Source: Blastocladiella emersonii ATCC 22665 (lineage: Eukaryota; Fungi; Blastocladiomycota). From it: 64,000 nt of DNA. A program made the translations under genes and the position numbers. The stretch covers positions 868,001-932,000 of the forward strand of contig JANHCV010000009.1 of the NCBI GenBank assembly GCA_025594325.1. Direction: 5' to 3'. The notes under the pieces were generated by a model. The model made no database searches, had not been told where the DNA came from, and saw only the letters and a list, made by a program, of their open reading frames with translations. Shown in pieces: positions 1 through 16,397 of the stretch. Within the stretch, counting starts at the first letter, position 1. The number at the start of each line of letters is the position of its first letter.

Positions 1-1389
1 GCTCGGTAGCACACTCGAGGTGTGTTTTGCTTAGGGAGAGTAACGGCTATCAAAACTCGCGAGTCGGTGCGGACGGCCGCACGGAGCCTCGCGAGCCAGG
101 CGTTTCACGCGTTCTAACTTACACGGGCTGACCAACCCCGCGTGATTTACTCAGTTCATCAACTTAGATCAATTCGCTCCAACGTGTTGCAGTCGTTGCT
201 GCTTCGGAGAGACGCGTCGCGAGGCAGTCCAGCAACTGAAACGCGTCGACGCGACCAATCATGTGAGCACGCGCGACGCGTCGCGCATCCCAGCGTGGGC
301 CGCCAGCAACTCTTCCTTGACGGATATCGATATATTTAATGAGCAGCCACTTGGTGCAAACTCAGATGGACTAAGGGTCCCACGCTACCAACTTGCTGAA
401 GCTTGTTCACGATTCGTTGCCTAGAGCGCAACCTACGGCGAGTACGAGGAAGTTTGACTTGGCTTCCCCTAAGCTTCAAGCAACTCAGATTCCCGGCCAC
501 ATGCTCGGCCTAGTTTGCTCGAACTTGGACCCAGTGAGGGTGAAGTCAGCTCAAGCTCAGCCTCACCTTGGACCGCACCAGCCTCAAGCTTGAGCGAGCT
601 AACGAAAATTCGATGACGTCTCAGCCCTAGCTTGTTCATTCTCGGCCGAACTCCAGCCACTTTTCCAGCTTTCCCAACTGCTGCGAGATCGAGGGGCTGG
701 CTGGGATGGCAATGAATTCGTTGCTCATCAAGGTCTCGCCAGTTTAAGTCATGTTTTCGTTTATTATTTTCAAAAGTCCCTCGTGAACATGTTCCTCATG
801 GTCCTGAACACTGACTGAAACGAGATTTGGAGCGACACATGCGGGCGTCCTTCAACGTGTGAAGCCGAGAATGGCGCGCAGGACCTCAGGCTAGCAACGT
901 CAGTTTGCCGCAGGCCTGTTCGCTTGATCGCAGGACGTCCTGTGGGATTTTCTCCCCCGCTTGATGCCATAAAGTTGAGTAGACCCACGAAAGAAACGAT
1001 GTGTACGCTAAAACTCGACTCGATGCTACCGAGCTGCCGCGGCACCGCCTCGGGCGTCTGATCCAGCTCACACATGGTGCCGCTCAACCCCTTCCACGGC
1101 ATTCCCTCACGCGACGTTTTTCGCAATCATGACGGGACATTCACCTCGACGCCGCGCCGCGCTCTGTGGGTTCTACGTCCTGCGCGCCGTTGCTTGAACG
1201 ATTGCCGATACTCGGCGCAGGGATTTGGTCGCCACCATGAGCTACTTGCTCATTTATGTCCGCCCCAGAGTCGTTCCTTGATATGTTTGTTCATGTGGGC
1301 CCGGATTGTTGCGTCTAATCTTGCGTGAAGAGTAAGCGTTAAGTGGTGGGATGGAGGGATATCTGGTCTTCAGCCCCCCGTGAGACAGT

Positions 1390-2539
1390 TTGAGACGCGT
1401 TGCGATATCATGTGAGCGTCTCGTGGCGTGGCTGAGCACCTTTTCGCCCGCGCTCTCGCCGACCTCGAGCGACGCCGTCCCGTCCCGAGTTCCCTCCTCC
1501 CCCACTCAACCGACGCACCGCCGTCGCAACGTAAAATCCATGCAAAAGCTCGAGACGCTCAACATCCCCAAGGTGATCCACCGTGTTTTATGTTATGCCG
1601 TGGACTTGCACGACGACCCGGACGACTTGACCGGCCTGCTGGCCTGCTGCAGTACTCGAGCGTGATGCTGCAGCGGCTAATCCCGGGCGTGCAGCGCGCT
1701 ATTGTTCGGCGCTGCCCTCAACTCTCCTTGTTCGAGGCGACCGTGCAGGGCGACATCCTCCTTTCCTAGTCGTCTTGGTACCCTCCATCTGAACTCGAAT
1801 TCCATCAACTCGTCCGTCCTTGCTCGCATTTCTGTGCAGCTTCCTCCAGCTCTCGGACACCTCTACATTGAGCGCAACGCATTTGCTGCGGCCATAGAGG
1901 ACCAGCAGTACTGGGTGCTCCCTCACGAGCTGCAGAGCCTTATTCTGGCCCACGAAAAACTTTGGCTTCGCAGCACCAGATCGCTGGCTGCGGCGCTCGT
2001 TGACTCGAAGATCAGGGTGCTTTACTTGATTGATGTCAACATGACAGCACACGAAACCTGTCAAGTGTTAGACTGGCTGCCCAGGTCCCTGGTGACGCTC
2101 CGCTTCGGCCGCTGCCAACTCGTTTCCGAGGTCATCCAAGCGCTCTCGAGAGCACTCTGCCGTGGCTTGCGGGGGCTTGAACTCGTTCAAGTGGAGTTTC
2201 CGCCAGGTTGCCTCGCAGAGTTATTCGGGCTTCTGCCTTCAACTCTCGAAGTGCTGTACCTCTTCAACGTACAAATGACTATGGACGCCATCGAAGTGCT
2301 GGCCAGGAATATGCCATCAAGTCTGCAAACTCTTTGGATCGAGGGAACGCCGGCGCTCAACAATGCCCTTGTGGCGGCCCGCTTGCGGCACTTGCCCCCA
2401 ACAAACCACTTTTCGGACGTTGCCGTCCACGGTCTAATCATGAGCATCCCCCCGAACCTCAAGGACCTGAACCTTCGAGGAAATCGGATCAGCGCTGCTG
2501 GCAAGAGTGCCGTGCGCGCCGCTGCGTCGCGGCTCCGCA
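1390..2539 (+). pseudogene. RNI-like leucine-rich-repeat protein gene, frameshifted and interrupted at its 3' end by two Helitron-like insertions
   Basis: ORF 1702-2811 shows LRR periodicity (LGTLHLNSNSI, LPHELQSLILAH, LPRSLVTLRFGRCQL, LPSTLEVLYLFNVQM, IPPNLKDLNLRGNRI). Upstream coding-like sequence lies in two other frames (1390-1665, 1428-1769), implying frameshifts. Native sequence stops at A2539; the rest of the listed ORF is read-through into element A. The true C-terminus is at 7487-7498 and 13350-13354. The 5' start is uncertain. Confidence 0.75.
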
Positions 2540-2803
2540 TCAAATCGAGGGCTAAAGCCCTCTATTTTTGCCTAGCCGACGCGCGCCCTTGGGATCTGAC
2601 GTGTCTCCCTGGCCCACGTGCGTCACGCACGTGTTTCACGCGTTTCACGGGATATAACCAACGCGTCCGAGTCTCCCACCACCAAGCTCTCTCGCCTGCA
2701 GTCAATCGTGATAGTAACAAAAAAAAATCAAGTATTGTGAATGAGAGGACAGCAACAACAAAGGAGGGAAACGGAGGAAGTGGAGAGAGGAACACGACGT
2801 CGT

Positions 2804-3748
2804 TCAGTTAACTGAACGGCGGCCACCGCCACGGCCGCGGCGACGCTTGGGCATCGCCTCGAACTCGTCCTCGTTGCAGCCGCCCTCTTCGGCGGCCATG
2901 GCGGCCGTGCGCTTGGGCGCGTCAGCAGGAACGGCCGTGGCCGACGCGACCTCGCGATCCGTCGTGCCCGCCTCCTCGATGATGGGCGCCGCGAGCGCGA
3001 CTGTCGCACTTGAAGTCGACGACGACAACGACGCGGCCGACGAGCCGACCGGCGGCCCGGCGGGCTGTACGGCGGTCGAGAGCGTCGAGGTCGACAACGA
3101 CGAGGCGACGGTCGCGTCGACCTGCGAAACGGCGGGCTGCACGGCGGTCGAGGACGACGACGACGCGTTGGTGATCTGCGGTGCGGCGGTCTGCACGGCC
3201 GTCGTCGAGGAGGACGACGAGGCGACGCCATCATTGAGCTCGCGCAGGATCCCCGCCATGCGCGTTGTGAACTCCGGGTCCGAGTCGCCCTCCTCGTCGG
3301 ACACGTCAAACACGAACCGCGGCTGGCGCACGGGCGAGGACAGCGTCAGCCCCAACAGCTGCGTGGCTGGGGTCGGCGGGATGCACTCCTGCGGGCGGGC
3401 GCCGTACGGGTTGCTGCGGCCCGCGGGACCGCCGTGATGGTGCGCCGGCGGCGGCAGAGCGGGCGCCGACGACGAGCCCGCGGGACCACCGTGATGGTGA
3501 TGGTGGGCCGGCGGCGAGACGGCAGGCGCAGACAACGAACAGGGGGTCGACGGTGGGTTGAAGGACGAGGCCGTCGACGGCTGCTGCGGCGGGACGGCGA
3601 GCGTCGACGACGAGGCGGGCGCCGACGACGAGGAAGAGGGGGTGGAGGGCGGGTTGAAGTACGAGGCCGGCGGGGGCATGGCGGGCGCCGTGGGCGCCGA
3701 AGGCGGCGGCGCCGGCGTGATGATCTGCTGCTGCTGCTGCGGCTGCAC
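2804..3748 (-). CDS. Low-complexity Pro/Ser/Ala/His-rich ORF inside element A (possible captured terminal exon)
   Basis: 314-codon ORF starting at GTG directly after a possible acceptor (TTCATTGCGCAG|GTG). Internal duplications (FNPPSTP x2, PPAHHH(HH)GGPAG x2) and a basic C-terminal KRRRGRGGGRR. No recognisable domain. Confidence 0.35.
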   Translation of the reverse strand: MQPQQQQQIITPAPPPSAPTAPAMPPPASYFNPPSTPSSSSSAPASSSTLAVPPQQPSTASSFNPPSTPCSLSAPAVSPPAHHHHHGGPAGSSSAPALPPPAHHHGGPAGRSNPYGARPQECIPPTPATQLLGLTLSSPVRQPRFVFDVSDEEGDSDPEFTTRMAGILRELNDGVASSSSSTTAVQTAAPQITNASSSSSTAVQPAVSQVDATVASSLSTSTLSTAVQPAGPPVGSSAASLSSSTSSATVALAAPIIEEAGTTDREVASATAVPADAPKRTAAMAAEEGGCNEDEFEAMPKRRRGRGGGRRSVN

Positions 3749-3780
3749 CTGCGCAATGAAGTCACACGGCGGCCGCCGGG

Positions 3781-6700
3781 ATCTTCTCGCACAAGTTCGC
3801 GCCGCTGCTGCTGTACCAGGCGATGCGGTGGCTCGACCTCGCGGGCGTCGCTGCTGGCGAGGTGACCGAGCAGGATGTCGAGTGCATTGCGAGCACCATC
3901 AGCGTCGACGGCAAGCCGATGCTCAACGTCGCGCTGCACGACTATGTGTTCCGCCCGCCCGAGCTCGAGAACCTGTCGTGGTACGAGTTCATCTCCTCGT
4001 GGTCGCGCGTCAACATGCCGCCGAAAATGCGCGAGGTCCTTGCCAACGGCGGGCGCGTCGTGCCCGTGCAAGCAGAACTCGGACCAGCTGCCGACATGCC
4101 GCCCGGCACGAGGCTGTCCTTCATGGCCGACCACCCGCTGTCCAAGACGCACGAGCTGCGCAAGAACATCGTCGAGGTCGTGCCCAAAATCGCCGGCCCG
4201 CACATGCCCGACCCGCGCAAGTTTTGGGGACGCGCCCGGGTCCGAGGAAAAGTACTCGCGCATGGCGCTGCTGCTGCTCCGCCATTTCCGCGTCTCGAGT
4301 GGCATTCTCGACGAGAACGGCTCGGCGATCGCCAAGTTCAAGGCGTTCAAGGAGGGCCTCCAACCCGGCGACCCTGCGCTCAACCACCTCGAGTACGCCC
4401 AGGCGTACTACTTCAGTCTCGACGGTGCGCGCGCGTACCGTGAGTGCCGCGATCGCGAGAACGCCGAGCTCTCGGCCAGGCTGTCGCAGGAGGAGCGCGG
4501 CGAGCTGTTCGTTCCATCTCGCGACGGCGACCGCAACGCGTCAAGCTCGCGCGCCAAGGCGAGCGCCAACAAGGACCCGACTGCAGAATGGACCATGTTC
4601 ACTCAGTCGCAGCAGGACATTGCACTCGATCCGGTCATTGCCGACAACGCCATGAACGGTGCTGGCGCCGAGGTCGCGCCCACCGTTAGCGAGCAGAACT
4701 TCAAGCTGGTGATCGACGCGCTGGTCCCTGGTGCTGCTGCAGACCTGGTCGACCACCTGCGCCTCCCTCCAGTGCGCCCGTTCGACGTCAAGGCGGCCGT
4801 TCCACCGACGACGCTCAAGGAGCCCATCTCGGCGAACACGCTGAAAAAATTCCTGGCGCAGCACCGCAGCGCCGTATCTGCAGCGCCGGCCGCTGCTGGA
4901 ACCGCTCCTGTCGCTCCGCAAGGCGGGCAGTCGCCGCTCATTGGCGCGTCAACCACGGCAGACGCTGCTGCCGAGTCGCAGATCGGCGTCGATCCCGAAA
5001 ACGTCATTGAGGACGGTCCAGAAGCTCCAGAAGTACCCGCCGACGACGTTTGGCGCGGTACCTTCGCCGCGAGATTAACGGAATCTGCAGCGAAGCGCAA
5101 GCGGTTCCTCGTCATGAAGGCTGCGGACTTGCTCAACAACTTTGACCACGCGACTTGCGGCAAGGAGTGGACGGAGGCGGAGCAGCGCACCAAGCACACG
5201 CCCGCGTACGCGAGCCTCGCGCAGGTTTCGCTCAAGTTCAACCTCAACGAAGAGCAGCACCGCGCGTTCGTGCTCTTCCTCATGACGCTCATCGACACCT
5301 TCATCGGCGGCAACGCGGGTATCGCAGACGCTGCGGCCTCGGCCGAGCAGAACGTGATCCTGTTGGGCCGCGACGACGTCCTACATGTCGTCGGCACCGC
5401 GGCCCTCCCGCCCATGAGCAAGGACCGGACGCCGGTCATCCTCACTGGCTCGGGCGGCACGGGCAAGTCGCGCGTCGTCGATGCGATCCGATACTTTCTC
5501 GCGTCCTGGAACCGGGAAAAGTGCCTCATGGTCATGGCCATGACGGGCATCGCTGCCGCCAACATTGGCGGTACCACCATCCACGCCACGTTCCAGCTCT
5601 CGCTCAAGGGGGAGAGTCTCAGCCCCGACATCAAGCGCATCCGCACCGACTCTGCTGTCGCCAGCGCGTGGCAAGGACGTCACGCCGTGATCATCGACGA
5701 GTTCTCCATGTGCGACGCGCAGGTGCTCGGACGGGTCGACGCGAGCCTTCGCGACCTGCGTCGGTGCGACGAGCCGTTTGGCGGCTGCATCGTCATGCTC
5801 GCCGGCAACCATTTGCAGCTTCCACCAGTGAACGGCACGGCGCTGTTCCAGCTACCCGAGGTGCTCGACGATGCGCCAGACTCGTTCTTCGAGCGGCTGC
5901 TCGCGTACGACACCACGGGCGCGAAAAAAAAGCACTCAGGCCAGCTCGCGTACTGGCGCGCCCGACGTGTCGTTCGACTCGTGCGCAGCAACCGGTTCGT
6001 CAACGACCCATCATGGGGCAGGTGTCTCAACGCGTTCCGCCTCGACAAGGCCCCCGACGAGTTGCGCCGCCTGCTCGACTCGCGCACGACCGCTCGCCTG
6101 CGCCAGCTGAGCGACGACCAAGGCAACAACGAGCTCAAGAAGATCCTCCAGACGCGCGGGCTCACAGTCCTTGCGCCCGACAACTACACGCGTCACACCT
6201 TCAACCTGCTGTACACGCGGCTCGCCGCTGCGGACCCAGAACGCGTCGTGTTTCAGATCAAAGCCAGCATCACGCGCAAGAAGGAGCGAAACGGCGCAAC
6301 CGTCCGCCCCCCGATTGGCGAAAGGGACCTGTTCCGTCTCGCCGAGGAGCCCGACTCGATCACTCGTTTGCCAACCATCCTCGAGGTCTTTGTCGGCATG
6401 GAAGTGCGCGTCAAGGTCAACCAGTGCGTCGAGAAGGGGTGCGCGAATGGCGCTATCGGCGTCGTGCACCACATCGACTGGTTCCCGGGCACGACGTTTA
6501 CTGAGACCGGCTCGCGCATGTACCGCCCATCGCGGGAGCCACATACTGTGTGGATCGACCTGCCCGACGCGCCGCCTGGCCCTCGGTTTTCTGCCATGCC
6601 GGCCGATTGGCCAGACACGGTCATCCCGCTCGCCATGCACTCGGACGACTTTCTCTACAAGGAGGGCGGTATGACGTCGCGCGAGCGAACCGAACCCAAG

Positions 6701-7255
6701 AAACCCGAGTCCAGCGCACTGTGCGCCAAGATGGTCAAGAACTTCGATACTCACGAGCAGTACAAGGACCACGAGAAGGTCAAGATCAAGCAGTTCCCGA
6801 TCGTGCCTGCCTTTGCAATGACGGTGCACGGGGTCCAAGGCGTGACCAAGAACGCCATCATCTTGACGGATCCGTGCCCAGCTGGCTCGTCTGGATCGAT
6901 CAACGGGTCGTCGCTGTACGTTGCGCTCTCGCGGCTCCGCCAGAGCGCGTTTCTGTGGGTCCTCCATCCGATCCCGGACGGCGTGTACGACGTCATGGTC
7001 CCTGATCCGCGGGCCGTGGCCGAAGACTTGCGGCTCCAGGCGCTAGACGTGTTGACTGAGGGCGCGTTCGCTCACGGACAAACCTTTACGCAAACCCACC
7101 CACGAGTCGCAGAGCTCTTCTGTCACGCGATGCAAGAGCATCGCCAGATCAAGAGCGACAAGGAGGAGGAGCAGAAGGCCCGCGACCGAGAGTACTCAAG
7201 GCGGTATCGCGAGCGTAAGCGCGAGCAGAAGCGCGCTCCAGAATTGCATGAGTAG
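3781..7255 (+). pseudogene. Helitron-type PIF1 (SF1B) helicase, 5'-truncated, one frameshift
   Basis: Motifs: Walker A GSGGTGKS, AMTGIAAANIGGTTIH, Walker B IIDEFSM, GNHLQLPPV, QFPIVPAFAMTVHGVQG, YVALSRLR. The upstream linker (FSHKF, DYVFRPPELENLSWYEF, HPLSKTH, PKIAGP) is in frame 3823 and switches +1 to frame 3875 at AAG TTT T GGG GAC (~4222-4225), continuing EEKYSRMALLLLRHFR. Confidence 0.88.
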
Positions 7256-7486
7256 CGGCGGAGCAAGAGGCTTCGCGAGATTTAGTGTAAGATTTCATTT
7301 GTAGTGTTATAAAGTATACTTGGCTGCTTTCAATTACTTTGGTGTGTGATGGGAACAGAGATGCGACTCCATAATGACGCGCGACTGTCAGCGGTACAAA
7401 ACCTCCCGCGTGTGCCGTGCTCCAACGTGGCGGAGGGCTTTAGCCCTCGATTGAAGACCAGACGCGAAGCGTCTAGGTGGTTCAAG

Positions 7487-7498
7487 TAAAATTGACGA
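7487..7498 (+). other. 12-bp remnant of the LRR gene stranded between elements A and B
   Basis: Sequence TAAAATTGACGA. Joining A2539 + 7487-7498 + 13350-13354 gives CGC ATA AAA TTG ACG ATA TAA (R-I-K-L-T-I-stop) in the LRR frame, followed by AT-rich 3'UTR-like sequence. Confidence 0.8.
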
Positions 7499-7880
7499 TC
7501 TAGTCGAGGGCTAAAGCCCTCTTTCTAGACCGGGTCGCTGCCGGATAGGGTGCCGACGCTCACGTGAGCGCCATGCACGTGAGCGACCCGAAAACGCGTG
7601 ACAGACGCGTCGTTTCTCATGTGACTGCTGTGGCGCAACGCGTCCTGGCCTTGCACGTGATCGGCCTCGGCCCAACCCCCGGAAGCGCGTCGCTTGACGC
7701 TGTTCCGCTCGGCCATCGCGGAACGTTTAACGCTTTGCACCGACCCTCGACCAGGCCCGCGAGACTCCGAGCACATGAGAGCGTGAGAGATGCAGAAGCG
7801 CGGTAAGCTGCTAATGGAGCCCGTGCTTGGCGTGCGTGTTGGAAAACGGACATCACCAAACCGCGCTTGCCGAGGCCCCA

Positions 7881-8096
7881 TGGATCCAGGGTGGATCCAC
7901 CTCGAGCCTTCCAGCGCTGGATCCAGCATTAATCTAACGCTGGATCCAGATTTCGCAGACTGGATCCACCATCATGGAAGGTGGAACCAGCCTTGACTGA
8001 GATGAGCTGGAATGACCTTGGCGGCGACCTGGATCGAGACGTTCATCCACTTTCAAAAGTGTGGACCCACACCTTGATCCATACGCCCTGGATCAA
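7881..8096. repeat. Left subterminal cluster of the palindrome TGGATCCA
   Basis: Exact copies at 7881, 7892, 7918, 7941 and 7961, plus several one-mismatch variants to ~8096. Confidence 0.85.
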
Positions 8097-8263
8097 CATG
8101 TTGTAAATGTAGTTCTAGGCGTCGATCTACGTCTATATCCAACTCTTGCTCAGGCAGAACCAGGAACTGATCGACGGTGAACATGGTGGTGAAGGAACTC
8201 GTGCGAAAATGCATCGAAATGGTCGCAACGACCCAGCAAACCATGCGAGGAAGCCGAACGCAA

Positions 8264-8704
8264 CTAGACGTGTTCGTGCTGCTGCAGGATGAGCTCGAGC
8301 CCGTCGCCAAACGTCGTGTTTGCGCCGCCAGGATCACGGCGGTCCACAAAGTCGAGCGAGTTGGCGATCTGCGGCATCATGAGCTGCGTGAGGGTCGCAG
8401 CGTCGTCGTACACGTTGATGAGGTACTCGGTGTACCCGCCCTGGTGCGCCGACGATGGCCGGTTCCCGTTCGGCGCGACGTGAAGGAAGGCCGAGATGGC
8501 CGACAGCGGCACGATGTGGAACTCGCACGTGGCGGGTTGCGTGGGACGGAGAGCAACCGTCTGCCCGGCGTTAAGGCCTGGCGGAACGACGTGCGGCACC
8601 GACTGGTAGAGGTGGAACCGCTCGACGAGCGTGATCTCAAGTTCAATGTCGTCCAACTTCAGGTCAGAGGGCCAGGTGCGCGGATACCGCTTGGCGACGC
8701 GCAT
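8264..8704 (-). pseudogene. Fragment resembling the C-terminal domain of fungal Plavaka/CMC-type transposon proteins
   Basis: Pattern TLVERFHLY...PGL...FHIVPLSAISAFLHVAP...YLINVYDD recalls the AYVEWF...IIPL..I...HLIP...YVN.F.D pattern remembered for that family. No catalytic core seen. Recognition by eye only. Confidence 0.45.
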
Positions 8705-9188
8705 CCGAGGCCATCAGCAAGCTCGAAGTCTTAACTGAGACTCATAAAGCTTCAAGATGCGAGAGCTCTCACGACCGCCGTTACGACTCTTCACGCGAGG
8801 GAACGCTGCGGCGCGGCTTGCTCGCCGACCAGGTCCGTCTCGGTCCACTTCCAAAGCTCACGGCACGGCCACACGCTTGCAGCGAGTGATTCATGGATCA
8901 TTCATAGAGTGCGACGTCGCGGTACCGTCGCCGGGAGAAGAGAGCGCGGCGCTGCAGCGAAGCGCGAGCCGCAAAACGCGTCGAAGCCAACGTCACGTGA
9001 GCGCGTCGATCGTTTCAGCCGCGTTCGCTTTTCGCGGACTTCGCGCCGCGGCGGCTCGCACTCTCCCGCCCCACCACCAACAGCGCATCCGCCCAGCGCC
9101 GCCACGCGTCCGCGGCACGGTGACCCCACGGTACGCGTCTCTCCCCTTCTCCGAGGTCTCTCGCTCCTCGCGACGTGCATCCACAGCC

Positions 9189-11088
9189 ATGCCTCGAGAC
9201 CCGCGATACGCCCTGCACGCTTCGGCGGGTCTTGCGCCTGCTGCGCTTGATGCTCGCGCCGCGTTCCCACGCCCTCCGCGCCGGCTGTCCGTTCGCTCGC
9301 TGACGCGTCACACGGTCACCTTGCTTTCTTTCGTAGCCTTCGAGATGTACATCAAGCTGCAGCGGCGCTCGTGGGGGCCGTCGTGACGCACCCGCGTCGA
9401 TCTTGACCATGGTCGCGACTAGGTGCGCCGTGTGCGGCTCGGTCTCCTGCTCCCACGGGCCGAGACTCACATGTTCGCGAACTCCATCGGTAGGGCGCCA
9501 AGTACGCCAAGCGGCTACGACAAGCGCCGCGCCTTCGCCCGCCAGGCCAACTCGTGTGCGACGCGCTCAAGGCTACACGGTACGGGCCTTCTCCTTCGCG
9601 TTCTCGGCGTGATTCGCGCTGATCGTGGGCACGGACAGGCTCCGAGCTCCCGAGCGACATCGCTCGTGTCGTCGGCCCAGATCCTGGCGACGCGGCCCGT
9701 CCGTTCGCGCCATGTGTATACTTCGCCCGATCCCTTGCTCACTTGTCTCCGCCACGTCACCCATAGCCTCGGTCAACCACGACAAGCCTCAACGGTGCTC
9801 CAGAACACGCGGCGAGGTCTCGCTGCTCGGGTCGTCGCTGGCCTCAAGCACGCGCCTGGCTGCACGTGCGAGTCCGAGTTCGAGGTACGTGACTCGGTCA
9901 ACACGCGCCCATGGACCGAAGCTGACACGGCCGATTTGAGTAGTTCATCCAGTACGTCAAGCTGCAGCGGCAAGGGTCGCCTCGTCGTCCGCCCTTGTGG
10001 CGCGCGCGAGGTCGTGCGGCGTCGATCTCATACACCCGCATCAAGGACTGGAACCTCAAGTACAAGCTCGGCATCAAGGATATCGAGGCGTTTGACAAGG
10101 AGGTACGCGGACGCGGTGTGGGTCGCCGCGGTGGCAGGTGCTGATGCCGCTTCTGTGTAGGTCACCAAGGCCCTGCAGACGATCCGCAAGCCGTTCAAGG
10201 AGAACTCGAAGTGGGTCGACCTCGTGCAGGCGGCCGCCGACAACTCGTGCATCATCACCAACAAGGTCGGCGAAAAGAAGTCGCTCACCAAGCAGTGGCT
10301 GGTCGGCGAGGCGCCCGAGGAGCTCCACCGCGCCACGCTGGCCATGGTCGACGAGTACGACGACGCCGAGCTCGACATGGATTTCGCCGACACCGACCTC
10401 GATGCGGGGATGTCGGTCCGCGCGTGCCGTGGTGCTCACCCGCTGTACGTGTCCTTCCTCGACCGACTTCTCTTTGGGCAGGCGAACGACATGGCCAACG
10501 CTCGAGGCTCGAACCAGTCGTCGCACGGTACGGCTTTGCTCACCAAGTCGCACTCAATCCCGTCGCTCACGTTCCGCACTGTAGCCAAGCGCATGGCCGG
10601 CTACGCGATTGTCAGCGACCTCAAGCTGCTCGACATCAACAAGCCCCTCCCGATCGACGGGTCAAGTCCGGTGTGGCGCATCATGGCCGCGGTCGCTGTC
10701 CTTGTACGTTTTGCTCTTGCAATCTGCCGGGTTCCTCCGTTCGCCTTCGCCCTCTCTGACTTCACCGCGATGCACGCTCGCCGCTTTCTAGTGCGCATGG
10801 CGCATCACTGGGAGCGCGTACCGACAAGATATCATCGTCGGCCTGACCAAGGAGGACGCCAAGGTGACGCTCGCCGACTACTACGACGCCTTCCTCGTCT
10901 CGAGCACGGGTTCGGTTTCCGTCGCCAAGCGCATCTACCTGGCCTCGCAGCTCCGCTCGCTGTTCAAGCGTGGGATCCTCAACGTCAGCCTCGCCGAGAT
11001 CGCCCAGCAGAACACGGGCGTCGAGACGACCAAGACCCAGGCGGCTATGACCGTCGACATTGCAAACGACATCTGCCCCGACGAGTAG
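9189..11088 (+). pseudogene. Multi-intron gene of unknown function inside the nested element, probably decayed
   Basis: A series of short GT(ACG/GCG)...AG introns separates coding-like exons (FEMYIKLQRR, FIQYVKLQRQG, RIKDWNLKYKLGIKDIEAFDKE, VTKALQTIRKPFKENSKW, TLADYYDAFLVSS...ICPDE-stop). Apparent frameshift near 9370-9376. Confidence 0.5.
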
Positions 11089-11245
11089 CTGCGCCATACC
11101 ACATCTCGGGTGGCGGGATGTGCAGCGGGCGGTGCTCAAGGGCAGGTTCCCTTCCTTCATCTCGACCTCTCTGCCCTCTCCATGGTCATCGTTGTGGGGC
11201 GTACGCGTGTGTATATATTGAACCGTTCGACCCTTGATTTGCTCG

Positions 11246-11590
11246 TGGATCTCGAGTGCGCGTGCGTGGATTGCGACGTGGATCAGCGCCTCGACTCAGG
11301 CTATAACCAAATGGATCCACGCCAAGGTCGAGTTGATCGTCAAACTGATCGACGCAAGGATCCATGTTTATCGTGGCCTAGTTCCGTGCCTGGATTGCTA
11401 TATTACTTTTCTGGATCAAGCGTGGATCAAGCTTGGGCGAGCTGGATCCACCCGCAAACCGTGCGGACCTCTTAGATGGATCCAGCTTTTGGTCAAGGTG
11501 GATCGCGAGCTGGATCCAGGAAAGTAATATAGCAATCCACATTCCCCCGAGGTCCATCCAGTCCACGGCTGGATCCAGGGCGGATCCACT
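11246..11590. repeat. Right subterminal cluster of TGGATCCA with an internal 26-bp inverted repeat
   Basis: Exact copies at 11312, 11443, 11477, 11511 and 11570, plus variants. 11392-11417 is inverted at 11513-11538 (25/26 match). Confidence 0.85.
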
Positions 11591-11896
11591 TCAAATTGCT
11601 GGGGCACGGTTTGGTGATGGAGCCCGTGTTCAGTGCACATCCTTAAACGACGCGGTTCACCTGGGAGTCGCTAGCGCAGGCTCGTTGAAGTGGGCGCGAG
11701 TTCAACGGTTGCACCGAGAACGACTTGCGAGGTCCCATGAACGTGAGTTCGAGTGAGGACTGCGAGGTCGAGAGATCCGCTCTTTGAGTTGCGGTCCGTT
11801 ACACGGACGGGTCGCTCCGTGGCTTGGGTTTGCCAGACGTTGCAGCGGGCGCAGACGTCTTCGTGAGCGGATCGCTGGAACTCGCTGTTCGCGTGG

Positions 11897-12640
11897 GTGC
11901 GGGTCCGCGCAACGTGCTCGTTCGAGTGGGCCGTGCTCCGCTGGATCATCGCGGCCCGCGAGCTCCAGGTCGAGTGGGTCCGTGGCCACGCCGTCAACTT
12001 GGAGAATGAGGAGGCCGACGCGCTCGCCAACAAGGGCTGCCGCGCAACTCCCGTTGTGAATCGCCGCCGCCGTCCGCGCGGACCTCGATGCGCCCTTCAC
12101 GGCGCGCAGGCGCGGCTGCGACTTCAACTCAGTCCCGCGACGCGCTCTCCGCCGCCTGCACGACGCGCGACACGACCCGCTGCTCGCTCTGACCGCGTCC
12201 GCTGGCATCACGTCCTCCCCCATCGATGTCCCTGCCCTTGTCACTGCGCTTCGGGGCAGCACGCGCCGCATCCACCCGAGCGAGTCCCTCACCGCGAACT
12301 CGCTCCCGTGCTTCCAGCTCCGCGCGCTCGCAGGCCAGCTGCCGACCCGCAGCTGTTTGCACCAGCTCTGGCCGCACCGCTACGAGTCCCCCAACTGCGC
12401 CGAATGCCCAAAAACTGGCGGCAAGGTCGCCGACACTCAAGCGTACGCGTTTGAGTGCACACTCTTCGCGCTCAATCGTCTCCGCGGCACTGGACGACGT
12501 CCGCATCGTAAACGCCCTCGCGGCGGTCGACAAGGGCTAGATCGGGGGCGGGCTCCGCACCAGCGTCACCGGATCGCTCGCCGAGCGCCTTCTCAACCCA
12601 AAACACATGAAGCACCGTGGCCGCCATCGTGGACGCACCA
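11897..12640 (+). mobile_element. Non-LTR retrotransposon (LINE) relic: RNase H C-terminus plus C-terminal Cys knuckle
   Basis: WAVLRWIIAARELQVEWVRGHAVNLENEEADALANKG matches the RNase HI WVKGH...NE.AD.LA..G motif. Downstream, in another frame, LHQLWPHRYESPNCAECP...DTQAYAFEC resembles the LINE C-terminal zinc-binding motif. Multiple frameshifts. Confidence 0.7.
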
Positions 12641-12872
12641 CTCGTCGCGTGGTTCAAACAGCTTTACTGAGACGAACTCATCGATCCACGCCTCGCGCTC
12701 CTGCCGCGACGGCCATCGCCTCGAGCGCCATGCAGGAGCTTGCTTGGCGCCCTCGCTGCAGCGCGATTGCTGATGCCGCGCCGGTGACACATGACGGTGC
12801 CCTGCCGCCACTCAACGCGAGCGACCAACCGCACCATCCTTTGTTGAAGCGCGCGCATCGCGCAGCAGGGGA

Positions 12873-13256
12873 ACGCGCTGTGCTGTGACGCGCTGTGCTG
12901 TGACGCGCTGTGCTGTGACGCGCTGTGCTGTGACGCGCTGTGCTGTGACGCGCAAAGCTGCGACGCGCAAAGCTGCGACGCGCAAAGCTGCGACGCGCAA
13001 AGCTGCGACGCGCAAAGCTGCGACGCGCAAAGCTGCGACGCGCAAAGCTGCGACGCGCAAAGCTGCCACGCGCAAAGCTGCGACGCGCAAAGCTGCGACG
13101 CGCAAAGCTGCGACGCGCAAAGCTGCGACGCGCAAAGCTGCCACGCGCAAAGCTGCCACGCGCGAAGCTGCCACGCGCGAAGCTGCCACGCGCGAAGCTG
13201 CCACGCGCGAAGCTGCCACGCGCGAAGCTGCCACGCGCGAAGCTGCCACGCGCAAA
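12873..13256. repeat. 15-bp minisatellite, 25 units plus a partial unit
   Basis: 5x ACGCGCTGTGCTGTG, then 14x ACGCGCAAAGCTGC(G/C), then 6x ACGCGCGAAGCTGCC. Ends ~40 bp before the 3' inverted repeat of element B. Confidence 0.97.
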
Positions 13257-13865
13257 ACGGCGCAAGCGCAAAACGGCGCAAGCGCCCAACGTGGCGCGGG
13301 CTTTAGCCCTCGATTGAAAACCAGACGCGAAGCGTCTAGGTGCCTCAAGTATAATGTGTTAGATTGGTTCGGTAGTTTTCGATACATTCATTTACTTGTG
13401 TGTTCCCCTGCTTGAGACTTGGGATGAACGAACGACCGAAACGCGTCCAGACGCGTCGCTTCGGTGTGGCGCAGCGCGTCTCAGATGATCATGTGACCGT
13501 GCTCGAACTTCAAATCATCGGCCACAACTAGTCAGCGAAGGGTTTTGCGACTTTTCACTTGGCGCAATAGGTTTGATGGGCAACAAACTTTCGAAGTCGA
13601 GGCGTCGGGGCGACCAGCGGTCGACTTTGTTGATCAACGGGTTTGTTTGTCAACCTACAGCGTCCGCACAGCTGGCGCCGCGGCGTGTGTGCCACCCACC
13701 GTCTATCCATGCTACCGTCGCAATTTCGCTCGGCTCGTCGCTCATCGCAACCACAGCGACGATCGTTGTTCGTGCTTAGTCCGCGGTGAGTGGTCGACCA
13801 TGCTCAAGGACTTCCCACAAGTATCATCACCACGATGCAAGAACAGCTAGTTACTGTATCAATAC

Positions 13866-16397
13866 TCATACATGGTGAAGCAACGGCGACGTCTCACCCA
13901 CGCCCTCCCCCTCCCCCCGCTGCGCCACACTCCACTGCACCTCGCGCACCACATCCACCCCAAGCGGCACCAAGCTCGCCGCGAGACACACGATCCACCC
14001 CTCGCGTGCGATCGGCACGAGCCCGGCGGGTCCCGCCACGAGCGCAAACATCCCCGCGACAACAACCACAGCGACCGCGAGCCAAATCCCCGCGACGCGG
14101 GACGTGAACCCGTGCGCGCGGAGCGGTGCCGCGGGCGACCGCATTGCGTACGCGAGGACGATATGCGCGAGCATCCAGGTGACGAACGCCATACTGCGCG
14201 CCTGGTCGAGCGACGCGCCGACGACGAAGGCGCGGCCGAGCGCGAACGCTGCCAGGACCGCGGCGAGGAGCGGAGTTGCGGCGCCGGCGATCCAGCGCGC
14301 CAGGGAGGCGCCGAACATGGTGTCAGGCGACCCCGCGGCGGTGCGGTCGACACTGCAAAGGGGCATGGGCTCGCGCGCGAACAGCGTGGTGGCGCCGAGA
14401 TCCATGGACATTTCGAGGACGAGGAGCTGGACGGCTGAGAACGGGAACGCGCCGAACACGGCAACACAAACCACCGTCAGCGCGACGAGCGCGAGCTTGC
14501 ACGCGAGGTAGAAGGCGACGGCCTGGCGCACGCGGACCGTGGCCCAGTGCGCGACACGCACCGCTTCCGCAATCCCATCGAGCCCGCGGCCCAGGAGCAC
14601 CACGTCCGCGGCATCCAGCGCCGCGTCCGCGCGGCCCGGACTCGCGGCAACGACGGCCGCGACGGCCGCCGCGCGCATCGCGGCCGAATCGTTCGCCCCG
14701 TCGCCGACAAACAGGACGCGGTGGCCCGCGTCCGCGAGCTGGCGGACGAGCTGCACCTTGGCCTCGGGGCTGCACCGCGCGTGGACCTCGTCGACTCCGC
14801 CGACGGCGCGCGCGACCGCGTGCGCGGTGCCTGGGTGGTCACCCGTCGCGAGCACGATCCAGGTCCCCGCCGCGCGGCACGCGGCGAGCCACTCGGGCGC
14901 GTGCAAGCGGACCGGGTCGGTGAAGGCCAGCGCGCCGAGGTAGGTCAGGCCCGACTCGGACGACTGGGTTGCGATCCCGATCAGGCGGTACCCCTGCGCG
15001 GCCCAGTGCGCGAAGCGGGCGGATTCGGCGGATTTGAGGGTGGCGGAGAGCGGGCCCGCAGCGGTGGTACGGGACGCGAGCGCGAGCAGGGTCTCGGGTG
15101 CGCCGCGTAGGACGGTGCCCGAGGCGCGGACGACGCGGCGGAGCATGGTGTCCGGGTCGACCGACTGCTCGATGACGGGGCCCGCAGCGGCGGCGGCCGC
15201 GAGCACTTGGTCCGCAGCGTCGCCCCACCTGGCCTTGACGGCGGCGTCGTGCGGGTCGGTCCACGCGACGGCCGACGCGGCCCACGCCGCGAGGAGGTCA
15301 TCGGTCGGCTCCGCGCCGTCCGCCGCGCCGGGGACAAGGCGCGCGGCGAGGGCCATCTTGTTCTCAGTGAGCGTGCCGGTCTTATCGGTGACGAGCGCCG
15401 TGACGCCCGCGAGCTGCTCGAGGGCGCGCAGCCTGCGCACCACGACGTTGGAGTCCGTCAGATCGTGTGCGGCGGCGGCGAGGACGACCTTGACCATGAG
15501 CGGGAGCTCCTCGGGGATGGTGGCGAAGGCGAGGGTGAGGCCGAGGAGAAGTGTCTCGCGCCAGGGCAGGTGCAGGGCGAGGGTGCCGTAGGCGACGATC
15601 GAGGCGACGACAGCGGCGGCGAGGAGCGTGGTGAAGTAGGCGAGCCGCTTCATGAGCTTGGCGAGGTGCGTCTTGGGCTGCTTGGGCGGCTTCAGGCCGC
15701 CGAGCTGCGCGAGGCGTGTCGCGGGGCCGGTCGCGGTGACGATGAAGGTGCCTAGGGTCGGTCGTTAGTCGTTGCAGGCGGAGAAGCTGATGGGTGTGCG
15801 CGTACCGCGACCAGCAACGACAACGGATCCAGTCAAGACGACGTTCCGCGGGATGTCGCCCTCAGTGGTCCCCGCCAACGCCGCGGCGGAAGTCTTCTGC
15901 ACGGGCTCGTTCTCGCCCGAGTACGTCGCCTCGTTGACGAGCAGCGCGCCCTCGTCCGCGACGACCCGCAGATCCGCGGGCGCGGCCTGCCCGCGGTCCA
16001 GCAAAACGATATCGCCAGGCACGAGCTCGACGGACGACACGACCTCGACCCGTCCACCATCCCGCCGCACCGTGACTATCGACGCGGCGGGCGCGCTCAT
16101 GTTCTTGACCGCGACCTTGGCGCGGTGCTCCGTGACCATCTCGATAGCGACCATAGCGAGGACCGCGAGCGTAACGACCACGGCTTCGGCGAGCTCGCCG
16201 AGGACCAGGTACCCGGCGGCAACGGCAAACAGGAGCAGCATCATGGGCTCCTGCGCCTCGCTGAGCAGGACGCGCAGCAGGGGTTTCCCGGGCCGCAGCG
16301 GCGGCGGCGAGTTGGGCCCGAACGTCGCAGCGCGCCGCGCGACCTCGGCGGGCGGCAGGCCCAGGGACGGGTCCGTCGGCGGTTGATCGGGTTCCAT
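13866..16397 (-). CDS. P-type cation-transporting ATPase (P2-like, atypical PEEL motif), ~825 aa, one intron
   Basis: Motifs DKTGTLT, ATGDH, GDGAND, RGAPE, DIVLLDRGQAAPAD, TYSGEN and TM4 IPEELP. Intron 15752-15805 (GTACGC...GACTAAC...TAG) joins GRG|TFIVTATG in frame. Confidence 0.93.

What the first reader, a model, noticed from the sequence alone, without database searches (positions are those of the whole stretch)
2536..13354. Two sister Helitron-like elements inserted 12 bp apart, splitting the last six codons of an LRR gene
Seen: identical terminal architecture at 2540-7486 and 7499-13349, each at an A^T junction with no TSD and separated by only TAAAATTGACGA. Excising both gives CGC ATA AAA TTG ACG ATA TAA (RIKLTI-stop) in the LRR frame, then AT-rich UTR-like DNA, which independently fixes all four junctions to the base. 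Inference: two separate same-orientation insertions with unrelated interiors point to a strong local target preference, for example homing next to a resident 3' end, rather than tandem rolling-circle amplification.
Basis: partly seen in the sequence, partly recalled or inferred. Interest (0 to 1): 0.85.

Follow-up and report, generated by a model that had tools for sequence, protein, structure and literature searches.

The report
Two Helitron2-like transposons 12 bp apart
Two unrelated cargo-carrying rolling-circle transposons with the same ends landed 12 bases apart at the very end of a decaying F-box/leucine-rich-repeat gene of the water fungus Blastocladiella emersonii.

Summary
The architecture is real. 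Two same-orientation elements share an 18-25 nt 5' end and a ~70 nt 3' end, and their interiors are unrelated. The ends are of the Helitron2 type. The 5' end is a palindromic asymmetric terminal inverted repeat (ATIR) that forms a hairpin. Its reverse complement sits subterminally at the 3' end, followed by a long stem-loop and a short AT-rich tail.

All copies continue past CAAG into TAAAA. The 5 nt before TCGAGGG differ between otherwise identical copies. In one aberrant copy a 42-bp duplication of host PFK coding DNA starts directly after TAAAA.

Refined coordinates are E1 = 2545-7491, E2 = 7504-13354 and spacer = TTGACGATCTAG (7492-7503, still 12 bp). The peptide therefore does not fix the junctions. 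It is the same length as the paralog C-termini (TELLV*, TELHL*), which supports a native spacer and two separate insertions.

The LRR gene is a degenerate paralog. E1 encodes only a PIF1 helicase and no Rep. Homing to a resident end is untested. This is a new member of a known kind, of moderate-to-low interest.

The parts
1540..2544 (+). Degenerate F-box/LRR paralog up to codon AAA (K). It has an 8-bp tandem duplication (GGCCTGCT x2, 1633-1648) that shifts the frame. It lacks the equivalent of paralog residues ~73-278 and has a stop at 1766-1768 in the shifted frame.
   Evidence: tblastn with B. emersonii paralogs P0125/P0200. Three-frame translation against the paralog N-termini. Sub-threshold Pfam LRR_4 hit. 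75 homologs in the representative library, the best ones all from B. emersonii.
2545..7491 (+). E1: a 4947-bp Helitron2-like element that encodes a helicase but no Rep. It starts TCGAGGGCTAAAGCCCTC and ends TTCAAGTAAAA. It is inserted at AAA^TTG.
   Evidence: Boundaries come from comparison with L001-L004 and from the 42-bp host duplication in L002.
2545..2562 (+). E1 5' ATIR, which is also the 5' hairpin (GAGGGC-TAAA-GCCCTC).
   Evidence: 100% complementary to 7433-7450. DNA fold.
3875..7255 (+). Intact 1126-codon ORF. It has a PIF1-like helicase domain at about residues 517-660 and no Rep/HUH domain.
   Evidence: Pfam PF05970 at 5.4e-26. Nothing else in other frames or in the N-terminal half. 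tblastn with RepHel proteins matches only their helicase part.
7433..7450 (+). E1 3' subterminal ATIR, the reverse complement of the 5' end. It is itself a hairpin.
7451..7485 (+). E1 3' stem-loop: TTGAA..ACC-AGACGC-GAA-GCGTCT-GGT..TTCAA. It is followed by the 6-nt tail GTAAAA (7486-7491).
   Evidence: DNA fold -16.2 kcal/mol, z = -4.4. Conserved in all six copies.
7492..7503 (+). 12-bp host spacer TTGACGATCTAG. It holds the last three codons (L T I) and the stop codon of the F-box/LRR reading frame.
   Evidence: Reconstructed site translates ...AAASRLRIKLTI*. This is the same length as P0200 ...AAAPWTLTELLV* and P0125 ...AAPPSLTELHL*.
7504..13354 (+). E2: a 5851-bp non-autonomous Helitron2-like element with no Rep and no helicase. 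It has the same terminal architecture and ends TCAAGTATAA. It is inserted at TAG^TGT, directly after the stop codon.
   Evidence: The first 66 nt of E2 (7504-7569) are shared with many other genomic copies, which then diverge with a common consensus (loose ends behind 7569).
7504..7521 (+). E2 5' ATIR and 5' hairpin.
12882..13272 (+). 15-bp minisatellite (26 copies) just upstream of the E2 3' ATIR.
   Evidence: TRF, the repeat finder D1.
13296..13313 (+). E2 3' subterminal ATIR, with 1 mismatch to the motif.
13314..13354 (+). E2 3' stem-loop plus the tail GTATAA.
13355..13865 (.). Host 3' flank. It is a relatively AT-rich intergenic or UTR stretch shared with the convergent P-type ATPase gene (13866-16397, minus strand).

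Best explanation
E1 (2545-7491) and E2 (7504-13354) are two different non-autonomous members of one Helitron2-like family group of Blastocladiella emersonii.

Shared ends. Each element has the same cis-acting ends:
- The 5' end starts with TC, and the 5' ATIR begins at base 1 and folds into a hairpin.
- A subterminal 3' ATIR is followed by a long GC-rich stem-loop.
- The 3' tail is 6 nt long, GTA(A/T)AA.

Insertion. They inserted independently, in the same orientation and without target duplication, into the last codons of a degenerate F-box/LRR paralog. E1 sits between AAA and TTG, three codons before the stop. E2 sits immediately after the stop codon TAG. The 12 bp between them (TTGACGATCTAG) is native gene sequence.

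Mobilisation. Neither element encodes a Rep nuclease. E1 carries only a PIF1-type helicase ORF. E2 carries a nested TIR element, an orphan gene and a minisatellite. Mobilisation must therefore have been in trans, by a RepHel element that recognises these ends.

Shown versus inferred. The shared ends, the refined junctions, the unrelated interiors, the absence of TSD and of Rep, and the native reading of the spacer are shown. The rolling-circle mechanism, the trans-mobilisation, and the idea that the closeness reflects a local or sequence preference (A^T, a 5' flank resembling the element's own tail) rather than chance are inferred.
For: - Termini and their chance expectation.
- Folds of both ends.
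- The organism and four more copies were obtained through P0121-P0124.
- All six 3' ends read ...GGTG(GT/CC)TCAAGTA(A/T)A(A) and are followed by unrelated DNA that always starts with T.
- The four 5' ends share sequence only from TCGAGGG onward. One further contig copy also aligns from exactly 2545 (record 21).
- In L002 the host PFK coding sequence is duplicated over 42 bp (7706-7747 = 10911-10952). The 3' copy begins directly after TAAAA. The host base before the 5' copy is G, and the PFK frame reads through on both sides.
- Bao and Jurka 2013 (PMC3627910) define Helitron2 by a 5' ATIR 0-2 bp from the end, a 5' hairpin, a subterminal 3' ATIR upstream of a hairpin and a T start. They also describe one-ended copies with variable TSDs.
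- The reconstructed site gives RIKLTI-stop, the same length as the paralogs. By my own estimate, the chance that a random 12-mer reads L-x-(I/L/V/F/M)-stop is about 1e-3.
- The interiors are unrelated.
- There is no Rep.
Against: - No true empty allele or paralogous empty site was available. Only one isolate's reads exist.
- The 5' boundary rests on four copies. Three of the four 5' flanks read TC at -5/-4 (about 1e-3 by chance), so a TC start followed by 3 variable nt is not fully excluded.
- Because the element ends in A, starts with T and is followed by T, each junction has an uncertainty of +/-1 nt.
- L002 is an aberrant, rearranged copy, so its junction may not represent normal transposition.
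- Rep-dependent mobilisation is inferred. No autonomous partner with these ends was seen in the DNA I could read.
Confidence: 0.72

Rival explanations
1. The elements run TC...CAAG (2540-7486 and 7499-13349). TAAAAT and TATAAT are host DNA, so the family would insert specifically at A^TA(A/T)AAT.
For: - It gives the same paralog-length tail RIKLTI-stop (finding).
- Three of the four 5' ends would then start with the canonical TC.
- A conserved 3' flank can in principle be a strict target site.
Against: - In L002 the host PFK sequence at the junction is ...CCAG|TTGAGC..., with no TAAAA.
- Positions 3-5 of the supposed 5' end differ (AAA, GTA, CAA) between copies that are identical over the next 57 nt.
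- The ATIR would lie 3-5 nt from the end. Helitron2 elements have it 0-2 nt from the end.
Confidence: 0.12
2. A single composite event. Rolling-circle replication read through E1's 3' end and stopped at E2's. E1, the spacer and E2 then arrived together, and the 12 bp come from a donor locus.
For: - End-bypass and chimeric Helitrons are well known (background in PMC5148889).
- The two elements have the same orientation and compatible ends.
Against: - The spacer continues the F-box/LRR frame with L-T-I-stop, the same length as the paralogs.
- Other copies of the E1 3' end diverge right after position 7493, with disagreeing flanks.
Confidence: 0.08
3. Two independent insertions that are close only by coincidence within a small permissive target space (a gene-end AT-rich patch where insertions are tolerated). 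No homing or sequence preference would be involved.
For: - The site is the first relatively AT-rich stretch after a GC-rich ORF.
- The gene was probably already dead, so selection would not remove insertions there.
Against: - With tens of copies in a genome of a few tens of Mb, a same-orientation pair within 12 bp is expected about 1e-3 times under uniform insertion. This is my rough estimate depths, which the tool warns are not copy numbers.
- The other insertion sites are not particularly AT-rich (35-65% AT within +/-10 nt).
Confidence: 0.3

Closest known systems
Helitron2 group (Bao and Jurka 2013, Mob DNA 4:12; PMC3627910)
   Same: - The 5' ATIR sits at the very 5' end and forms a hairpin.
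- The 3' ATIR is subterminal and lies upstream of a hairpin.
- The element starts with T, and full-length copies have no TSD.
- The 5'-less copy L002, flanked by a variable-length duplication, resembles their one-ended transposition.
   Different: - No RepHel protein is encoded in either element here, so phylogenetic membership cannot be tested.
- The target is not TTTT^T/C but mostly A^T.
- The 3' ATIR lies about 40 nt from the end, against 20-30 nt.
- The L002 duplication is 42 bp, against 7-19 bp.
FoHeli1/FoHeli2 of Fusarium oxysporum (Chellapan et al. 2016, Mob DNA 7:27; PMC5148889)
   Same: - These are fungal Helitron2-type elements of 5-6 kb.
- They start with TC directly followed by a hairpin with a GAA or AAA loop.
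[quoted passage not shown]
- They have a loose target motif and no TSD.
- One FoHeli4 lies 2 bp from another, so near-adjacent insertions have a precedent.
   Different: - FoHelis encode RepHel.
- The terminal sequences are unrelated.
- Their target is TNAT^A/T.
- The host here is a blastoclad, not an ascomycete.
Canonical Helitron1 (5'-TC ... hairpin ... CTRR-3', A^T target)
   Same: The element starts with TC, three of four sites are A^T, there is a 3' hairpin, and there is no TSD.
   Different: It ends GTAAAA, not CTRR. It has a 5' hairpin and ATIRs, which Helitron1 lacks.
HINE/DINE-1 non-autonomous Helentron derivatives (Thomas et al. 2014, PMC4067079)
   Same: E2 has a tandem-repeat block immediately upstream of the 3' subterminal inverted repeat and stem-loop. 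From my own knowledge, not checked by reading the paper here, this is like the microsatellite region of HINEs.
   Different: Helentrons insert in a TT dinucleotide, and their autonomous partners carry an endonuclease. Neither was seen here.
Clustering of Helitrons (Yang and Bennetzen 2009, cited in PMC12477314)
   Same: [quoted passage not shown]
   Different: That was shown statistically in maize at a larger scale. Here there is a single 12-bp pair in a fungus.

Membership tests
Helitron2 | 5' ATIR 0-2 bp from the 5' end | tested here: met
   With the refined boundary the ATIR (TCGAGGGCTAAAGCCCTC) starts at base 1 of E1, E2, L001 and L003.
Helitron2 | 5'-terminal hairpin involving the ATIR | tested here: met
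   GAGGGC-TAAA-GCCCTC folds at -5.6 kcal/mol in both elements. The z-scores against shuffles are weak (-1.6 and -1.1).
Helitron2 | 3' ATIR subterminal, immediately upstream of a 3' hairpin | tested here: met
   ATIR 7433-7450 is followed by stem-loop 7451-7485. The E2 equivalents are 13296-13313 and 13314-13348.
Helitron2 | No target-site duplication on complete copies | tested here: met
   The flanks of E1, E2, L001 and L003 show no repeat.
Helitron2 | RepHel (HUH Y2 nuclease plus Pif1 helicase) clustering in the Helitron2 clade | tested here: not met
   E1 has a PIF1 helicase only, and E2 has neither domain. This is expected for non-autonomous members. No autonomous partner was available to test.
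Helitron1 (canonical) | 3' terminus CTRR | tested here: not met
All six copies end GTA(A/T)A(A).
Helitron1 (canonical) | Insertion between A and T | tested here: inconclusive
   The 5' flank ends in A in three of four copies and in G for E2. The 3' flank starts with T in six of six.
Helentron | TT target and an endonuclease-bearing RepHel | tested here: not met
   No 5' flank ends in T, and no endonuclease or Rep ORF is present.
F-box/LRR gene family of B. emersonii | Collinear homology to annotated paralogs, including the C-terminus | tested here: met
   P0125 and P0200 align over the F-box region (53-64% identity) and the LRR half (32-37%). The tail matches in length after removal of E1. The copy is frameshifted and internally deleted.

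The most novel reading that the evidence does not exclude
The family's nuclease may choose targets that mimic the element's own 3' tail. The 5' flanks read T-C-N-N-A^T and the tail reads T-A-A-A-A^T. IS91 does the equivalent with its terminal tetranucleotide. Alternatively, a resident element's terminal hairpins may attract new insertions. Either would make head-to-tail arrays of unrelated Helitron2 elements a programmed outcome rather than an accident.
Probability: 0.2. Interest if true: 0.6.

Novelty: new member of a known kind. Interest (0 to 1): 0.35.

Why it matters
- It gives base-level termini for a Helitron2-like family group in an early-diverging fungus (Blastocladiomycota). These are TCGAGGGCTAAAGCCCTC...stem-loop...GTAAAA, with a mostly A^T target. 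Such termini are needed to annotate the tens of copies in this genome and to find the autonomous RepHel partner.
- It is a cautionary case. An in-frame 'restored' peptide did not fix the junctions, because two junction sets 5 nt apart give the same peptide.
- The 12-bp pair, the 42-bp-duplication copy in a PFK gene and the Rep-less element that keeps an intact helicase ORF are useful material for studying target choice and one-ended transposition in Helitron2 elements. None of them lies outside what is already described for this group.

Tried and rejected
- Homologs of the full helicase ORF. The word-index search found only hits at <=40% local identity, the longest alignments at about 25%, and none from this genome. 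A short C-terminal query was needed to reach B. emersonii proteins.
- Homologs of the LRR ORF in the word-index search. None were found. The exhaustive HMMER search found the paralog family.
- Similarity between the window's 3' flank and the paralogs' 3' UTRs, which looked suggestive by eye. It is not significant against shuffles, so it was dropped as evidence.
- A resident Helitron 3' end just upstream of the L001 and L003 copies, as a test of homing. The L001 flank has a hairpin plus a TCAAGGTGG string, but the alignment to the E1 3' end is not significant (79 of 1000 shuffles score as well). No ATIR partner was found.
- A general association of this family with F-box/LRR genes. Only the window and L004 have it, out of six LRR loci.
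- Cluster look-up of antisense ORFs in L001 and L004. It failed because I trimmed the stop codon from the wrong end of minus-strand genes.
- Mixed junction models, such as a 5' end at 2540 with a 3' end at 7491, or a 3' end at 7492. They give tails of 23, 2 or 1 residues that do not match the paralogs in length, so they were rejected.
- Tandem rolling-circle amplification. It is rejected because the interiors share nothing.
Full report
**1. The observation**

Reading the three junction regions shows two elements on the + strand with the same terminal architecture. The motif TCGAGGGCTAAAGCCCTC occurs on the + strand at 2545 and 7504. It occurs on the - strand at 7433-7450 and, with one mismatch, at 13296-13313. 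Shuffles give 0.08 matches. The hairpin-containing 22-mer CCAGACGCGAAGCGTCTAGGTG occurs only at 7458 and 13321. Alignments and a self-BLAST show that the two elements share 25 nt at the 5' side, starting at 2539 and 7498. They share 71 nt at the 3' side (7422-7492 vs 13286-13355, 91.5% identity), and nothing in between.

The architecture, the shared orientation, the unrelated interiors and the 12-bp gap are therefore real. The 3' similarity does not stop at CAAG but continues through TAAAAT/TATAAT.

**2. Organism and further copies**

I confirmed this. A short query from the C-terminus of the E1 ORF hit KAI9183224.1 of B. emersonii ATCC 22665 at 92% identity. Its 90% cluster has four members. 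Fetching their loci gave four more copies of the E1 family from GCA_025594325.1:
- L003 is full length, 4969 bp and about 93% identical.
- L001 has an internal deletion.
- L004 is 5'-truncated and carries the same deletion.
- L002 is rearranged and lacks a 5' end.

Contigs of the only available sequencing sample show that the family is highly repeated. The 3' end and the first part of E2 are 5-10 times deeper than the E1 body. Several contigs run through ...CAAGTAAAATT (7493) and then diverge with disagreeing sequence.

**3. Where the ends really are**

*The 3' end.* All six 3' ends read ...CTAGGTG(GT/CC)TCAAGTA(A/T)A(A). They are then followed by unrelated DNA that always begins with T: TTGACG, TGTGTT, TGAGAG, TTGAGC, TTTGAC and TCGCGA.

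*The 5' end.* The four 5' ends share sequence only from TCGAGGG onward. The five preceding bases are TCAAA (E1), TCTAG (E2), TCGTA (L003) and ACCAA (L001). Yet E1, L001 and L003 are 100% identical over the next 57 nt. One further contig copy also aligns from exactly 2545 (record 21).

*L002.* This is the strongest piece of evidence. The insert interrupts a phosphofructokinase gene and is flanked by a perfect 42-bp direct duplication of host coding DNA (7706-7747 = 10911-10952). On the minus strand the PFK frame reads ...APGLVRGDMAPITRRMVL across the right copy and ...RRMVLNWTARGGSELGT across the left copy. The duplicated block is therefore host sequence. Upstream of the left copy the host reads CCAG. 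Upstream of the right copy the sequence reads CAAGTAAAA. TAAAA therefore belongs to the element.

*Literature.* Bao and Jurka place the 5' ATIR of Helitron2 elements 0-2 bp from the end. They also describe one-ended, 5'-truncated copies with variable TSDs (PMC3627910). Both points fit these boundaries.

*Refined coordinates.*
- E1 = 2545-7491.
- E2 = 7504-13354.
- Spacer = 7492-7503 (TTGACGATCTAG).

Each junction has an uncertainty of +/-1 nt, because the element ends in A, starts with T and is followed by T.

**4. The reading frame**

The 279-codon ORF at 1702-2538 has only sub-threshold LRR Pfam hits and no hit in the word-index search. The exhaustive search found 75 homologs. The best six are all B. 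emersonii proteins and form an F-box/LRR family with tandem clusters (L006). The closest paralogs end ...AAAPWTLTELLV* (P0200) and ...AAPPSLTELHL* (P0125).

With the refined junctions the empty site is ...CGC ATC AAA^TTG ACG ATC TAG^TGTGTT, which translates as ...AAASRLRIKLTI*. This is exactly the paralogs' length, with L and a hydrophobic last residue in the same positions. This happens because TCAAA resembles TAAAA and TCTAG resembles TATAA.

The peptide therefore cannot fix the junctions. It does argue, at roughly 1e-3 by my own estimate, that the 12 bp are native gene sequence and not cargo. Mixed models, with only one junction of a pair shifted, give tails that do not match the paralogs in length. 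The 3' evidence above thus pulls the 5' boundary with it.

The gene itself is degenerate:
- An 8-bp tandem duplication (GGCCTGCT x2, 1633-1648) shifts the frame within the F-box region.
- The equivalent of paralog residues ~73-278 is missing.
- A stop follows at 1766-1768.

No annotated protein corresponds to it.

**5. What the elements are**

Both ends fold as expected. There is a 6-bp 5' hairpin within the ATIR. At the 3' end there is the ATIR hairpin, a long stem-loop (7451-7485; -16.2 kcal/mol, z = -4.4) and a 6-nt tail.

E1 carries an intact 1126-codon ORF with a PIF1 helicase domain (PF05970, 5.4e-26). No Rep/HUH domain is present in any frame. The L003 copy of the ORF is broken by frameshifts.

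E2 has neither domain. It carries:
- a nested element with TGGATCCA arrays and CATCACCAAACCG inverted ends;
- an RNase H-like fragment;
- a 26-copy 15-bp minisatellite just before the 3' ATIR.

These are non-autonomous Helitron2-like elements. Their closest described relatives in structure are the fungal FoHeli1/2 elements (PMC5148889). Those start with TC directly followed by a hairpin and have an inverted repeat and hairpin 35-51 bp from an AT-rich tail. They show a loose target motif and no TSD. That paper also records one element 2 bp from another.

**6. Why so close**

Tandem rolling-circle copying is excluded by the unrelated interiors. A composite moved as one unit is unlikely, because the spacer completes the host frame. 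Two independent insertions remain.

Under uniform insertion a same-orientation pair within 12 bp is very unlikely. My rough estimate is about 1e-3, using copy numbers guessed, which the tool warns are not copy numbers. Some preference is therefore plausible. The data in hand show the following:
- A^T at three of four sites, and T as the first 3' flank base at six of six.
- TC at -5/-4 in three of four 5' flanks.
- TGA(C/G) within 1-3 nt after the site in four of six.

This pattern is compatible with a nick-site preference that resembles the element's own tail, as in IS91. I make that comparison from my own knowledge, and it is a lead only.

I tested the homing idea on L001 and L003 and found no significant resident end upstream. 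The family is not generally tied to F-box/LRR genes, because only two of six such loci carry it. In maize, Helitrons are reported to insert near other Helitrons (Yang and Bennetzen 2009, as cited in PMC12477314).

**7. Verdict**

The architecture is right, but all four junctions are 5 nt off.
Two separate insertions hold, and homing is unproven.
- This is a new member of a known kind.
- The scan had already noted this family elsewhere in the same genome (for example s1-283618, s1-289865 and s1-269512). Those notes use the same TC...CAAG reading that the present comparison corrects.

Noticed in passing
L002:7706-10952: A rearranged E1-family copy without a 5' end, containing inverted internal segments, interrupts a phosphofructokinase coding sequence. 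It is flanked by a perfect 42-bp duplication of host DNA. This looks like the one-ended Helitron2 transposition with a TSD described in Chlamydomonas, but the duplication is much longer.
   Followed up: partly
window 1633-1648 and 1763-1768: An 8-bp tandem duplication (GGCCTGCT x2) shifts the frame in the F-box region of the LRR paralog. About 200 codons present in paralogs are missing, and a stop follows. A GT..AG interval at 1667-1768 would restore the frame if it were spliced.
   Followed up: partly
window 3875-7255: E1 keeps an intact 1126-codon helicase-only ORF. The N-terminal ~500 residues have no recognisable domain and no Rep. The full-length sister copy L003 has the ORF broken by frameshifts.
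   Followed up: partly
L004:11651-13457: Another E1-family copy ends about 214 nt upstream of, and in the same orientation as, a further F-box/LRR paralog. It is a second case of this family next to this gene family. Four other LRR loci have none.
   Followed up: partly
L006:195-11737: A tandem cluster of five F-box/LRR paralogs. The family appears specific to B. emersonii among the best hits.
   Followed up: no
window 7850-11618: A nested element inside E2 has inverted ends CATCACCAAACCG... and dense arrays of the palindrome TGGATCCA at both ends. GGAGCCCGTG occurs at both outer sides.
   Followed up: no
window 12882-13272: A 15-bp minisatellite (GCTGCGACGCGCAAA, 26 copies with stratified variants) abuts the E2 3' ATIR. 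This resembles the microsatellite block of HINE/DINE-1 elements.
   Followed up: no
window 200-290, 1381-1440, 2580-2660, 7590-7660, 13440-13510; L001, L003 and L004 3' flanks: Clusters of ACGCGT-containing motifs (GACGCGTCGCGAAAT-like) occur with CATGTGA. They appear in the 5' regions of both elements and in host DNA near the insertion sites. They are possibly promoter boxes that the elements carry or land next to.
   Followed up: no
L003:5914-5928: The 5' flank of L003 reads TCAATCG-TA directly before TCGAGGG. This looks like a partial duplicate of the extended 5' inverted repeat (TTCAATCGAGGG).
   Followed up: no
window 11897-12454: An ORF in E2 has a near-threshold RNase H match (PF00075, 2e-5, 25.2 bits against a cut-off of 25.8). 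It is probably a retroelement fragment.
   Followed up: no
window 13866-16397 (-): A P-type cation ATPase gene convergent with the LRR paralog. Its 3' end shares the intergenic stretch downstream of E2.
   Followed up: no
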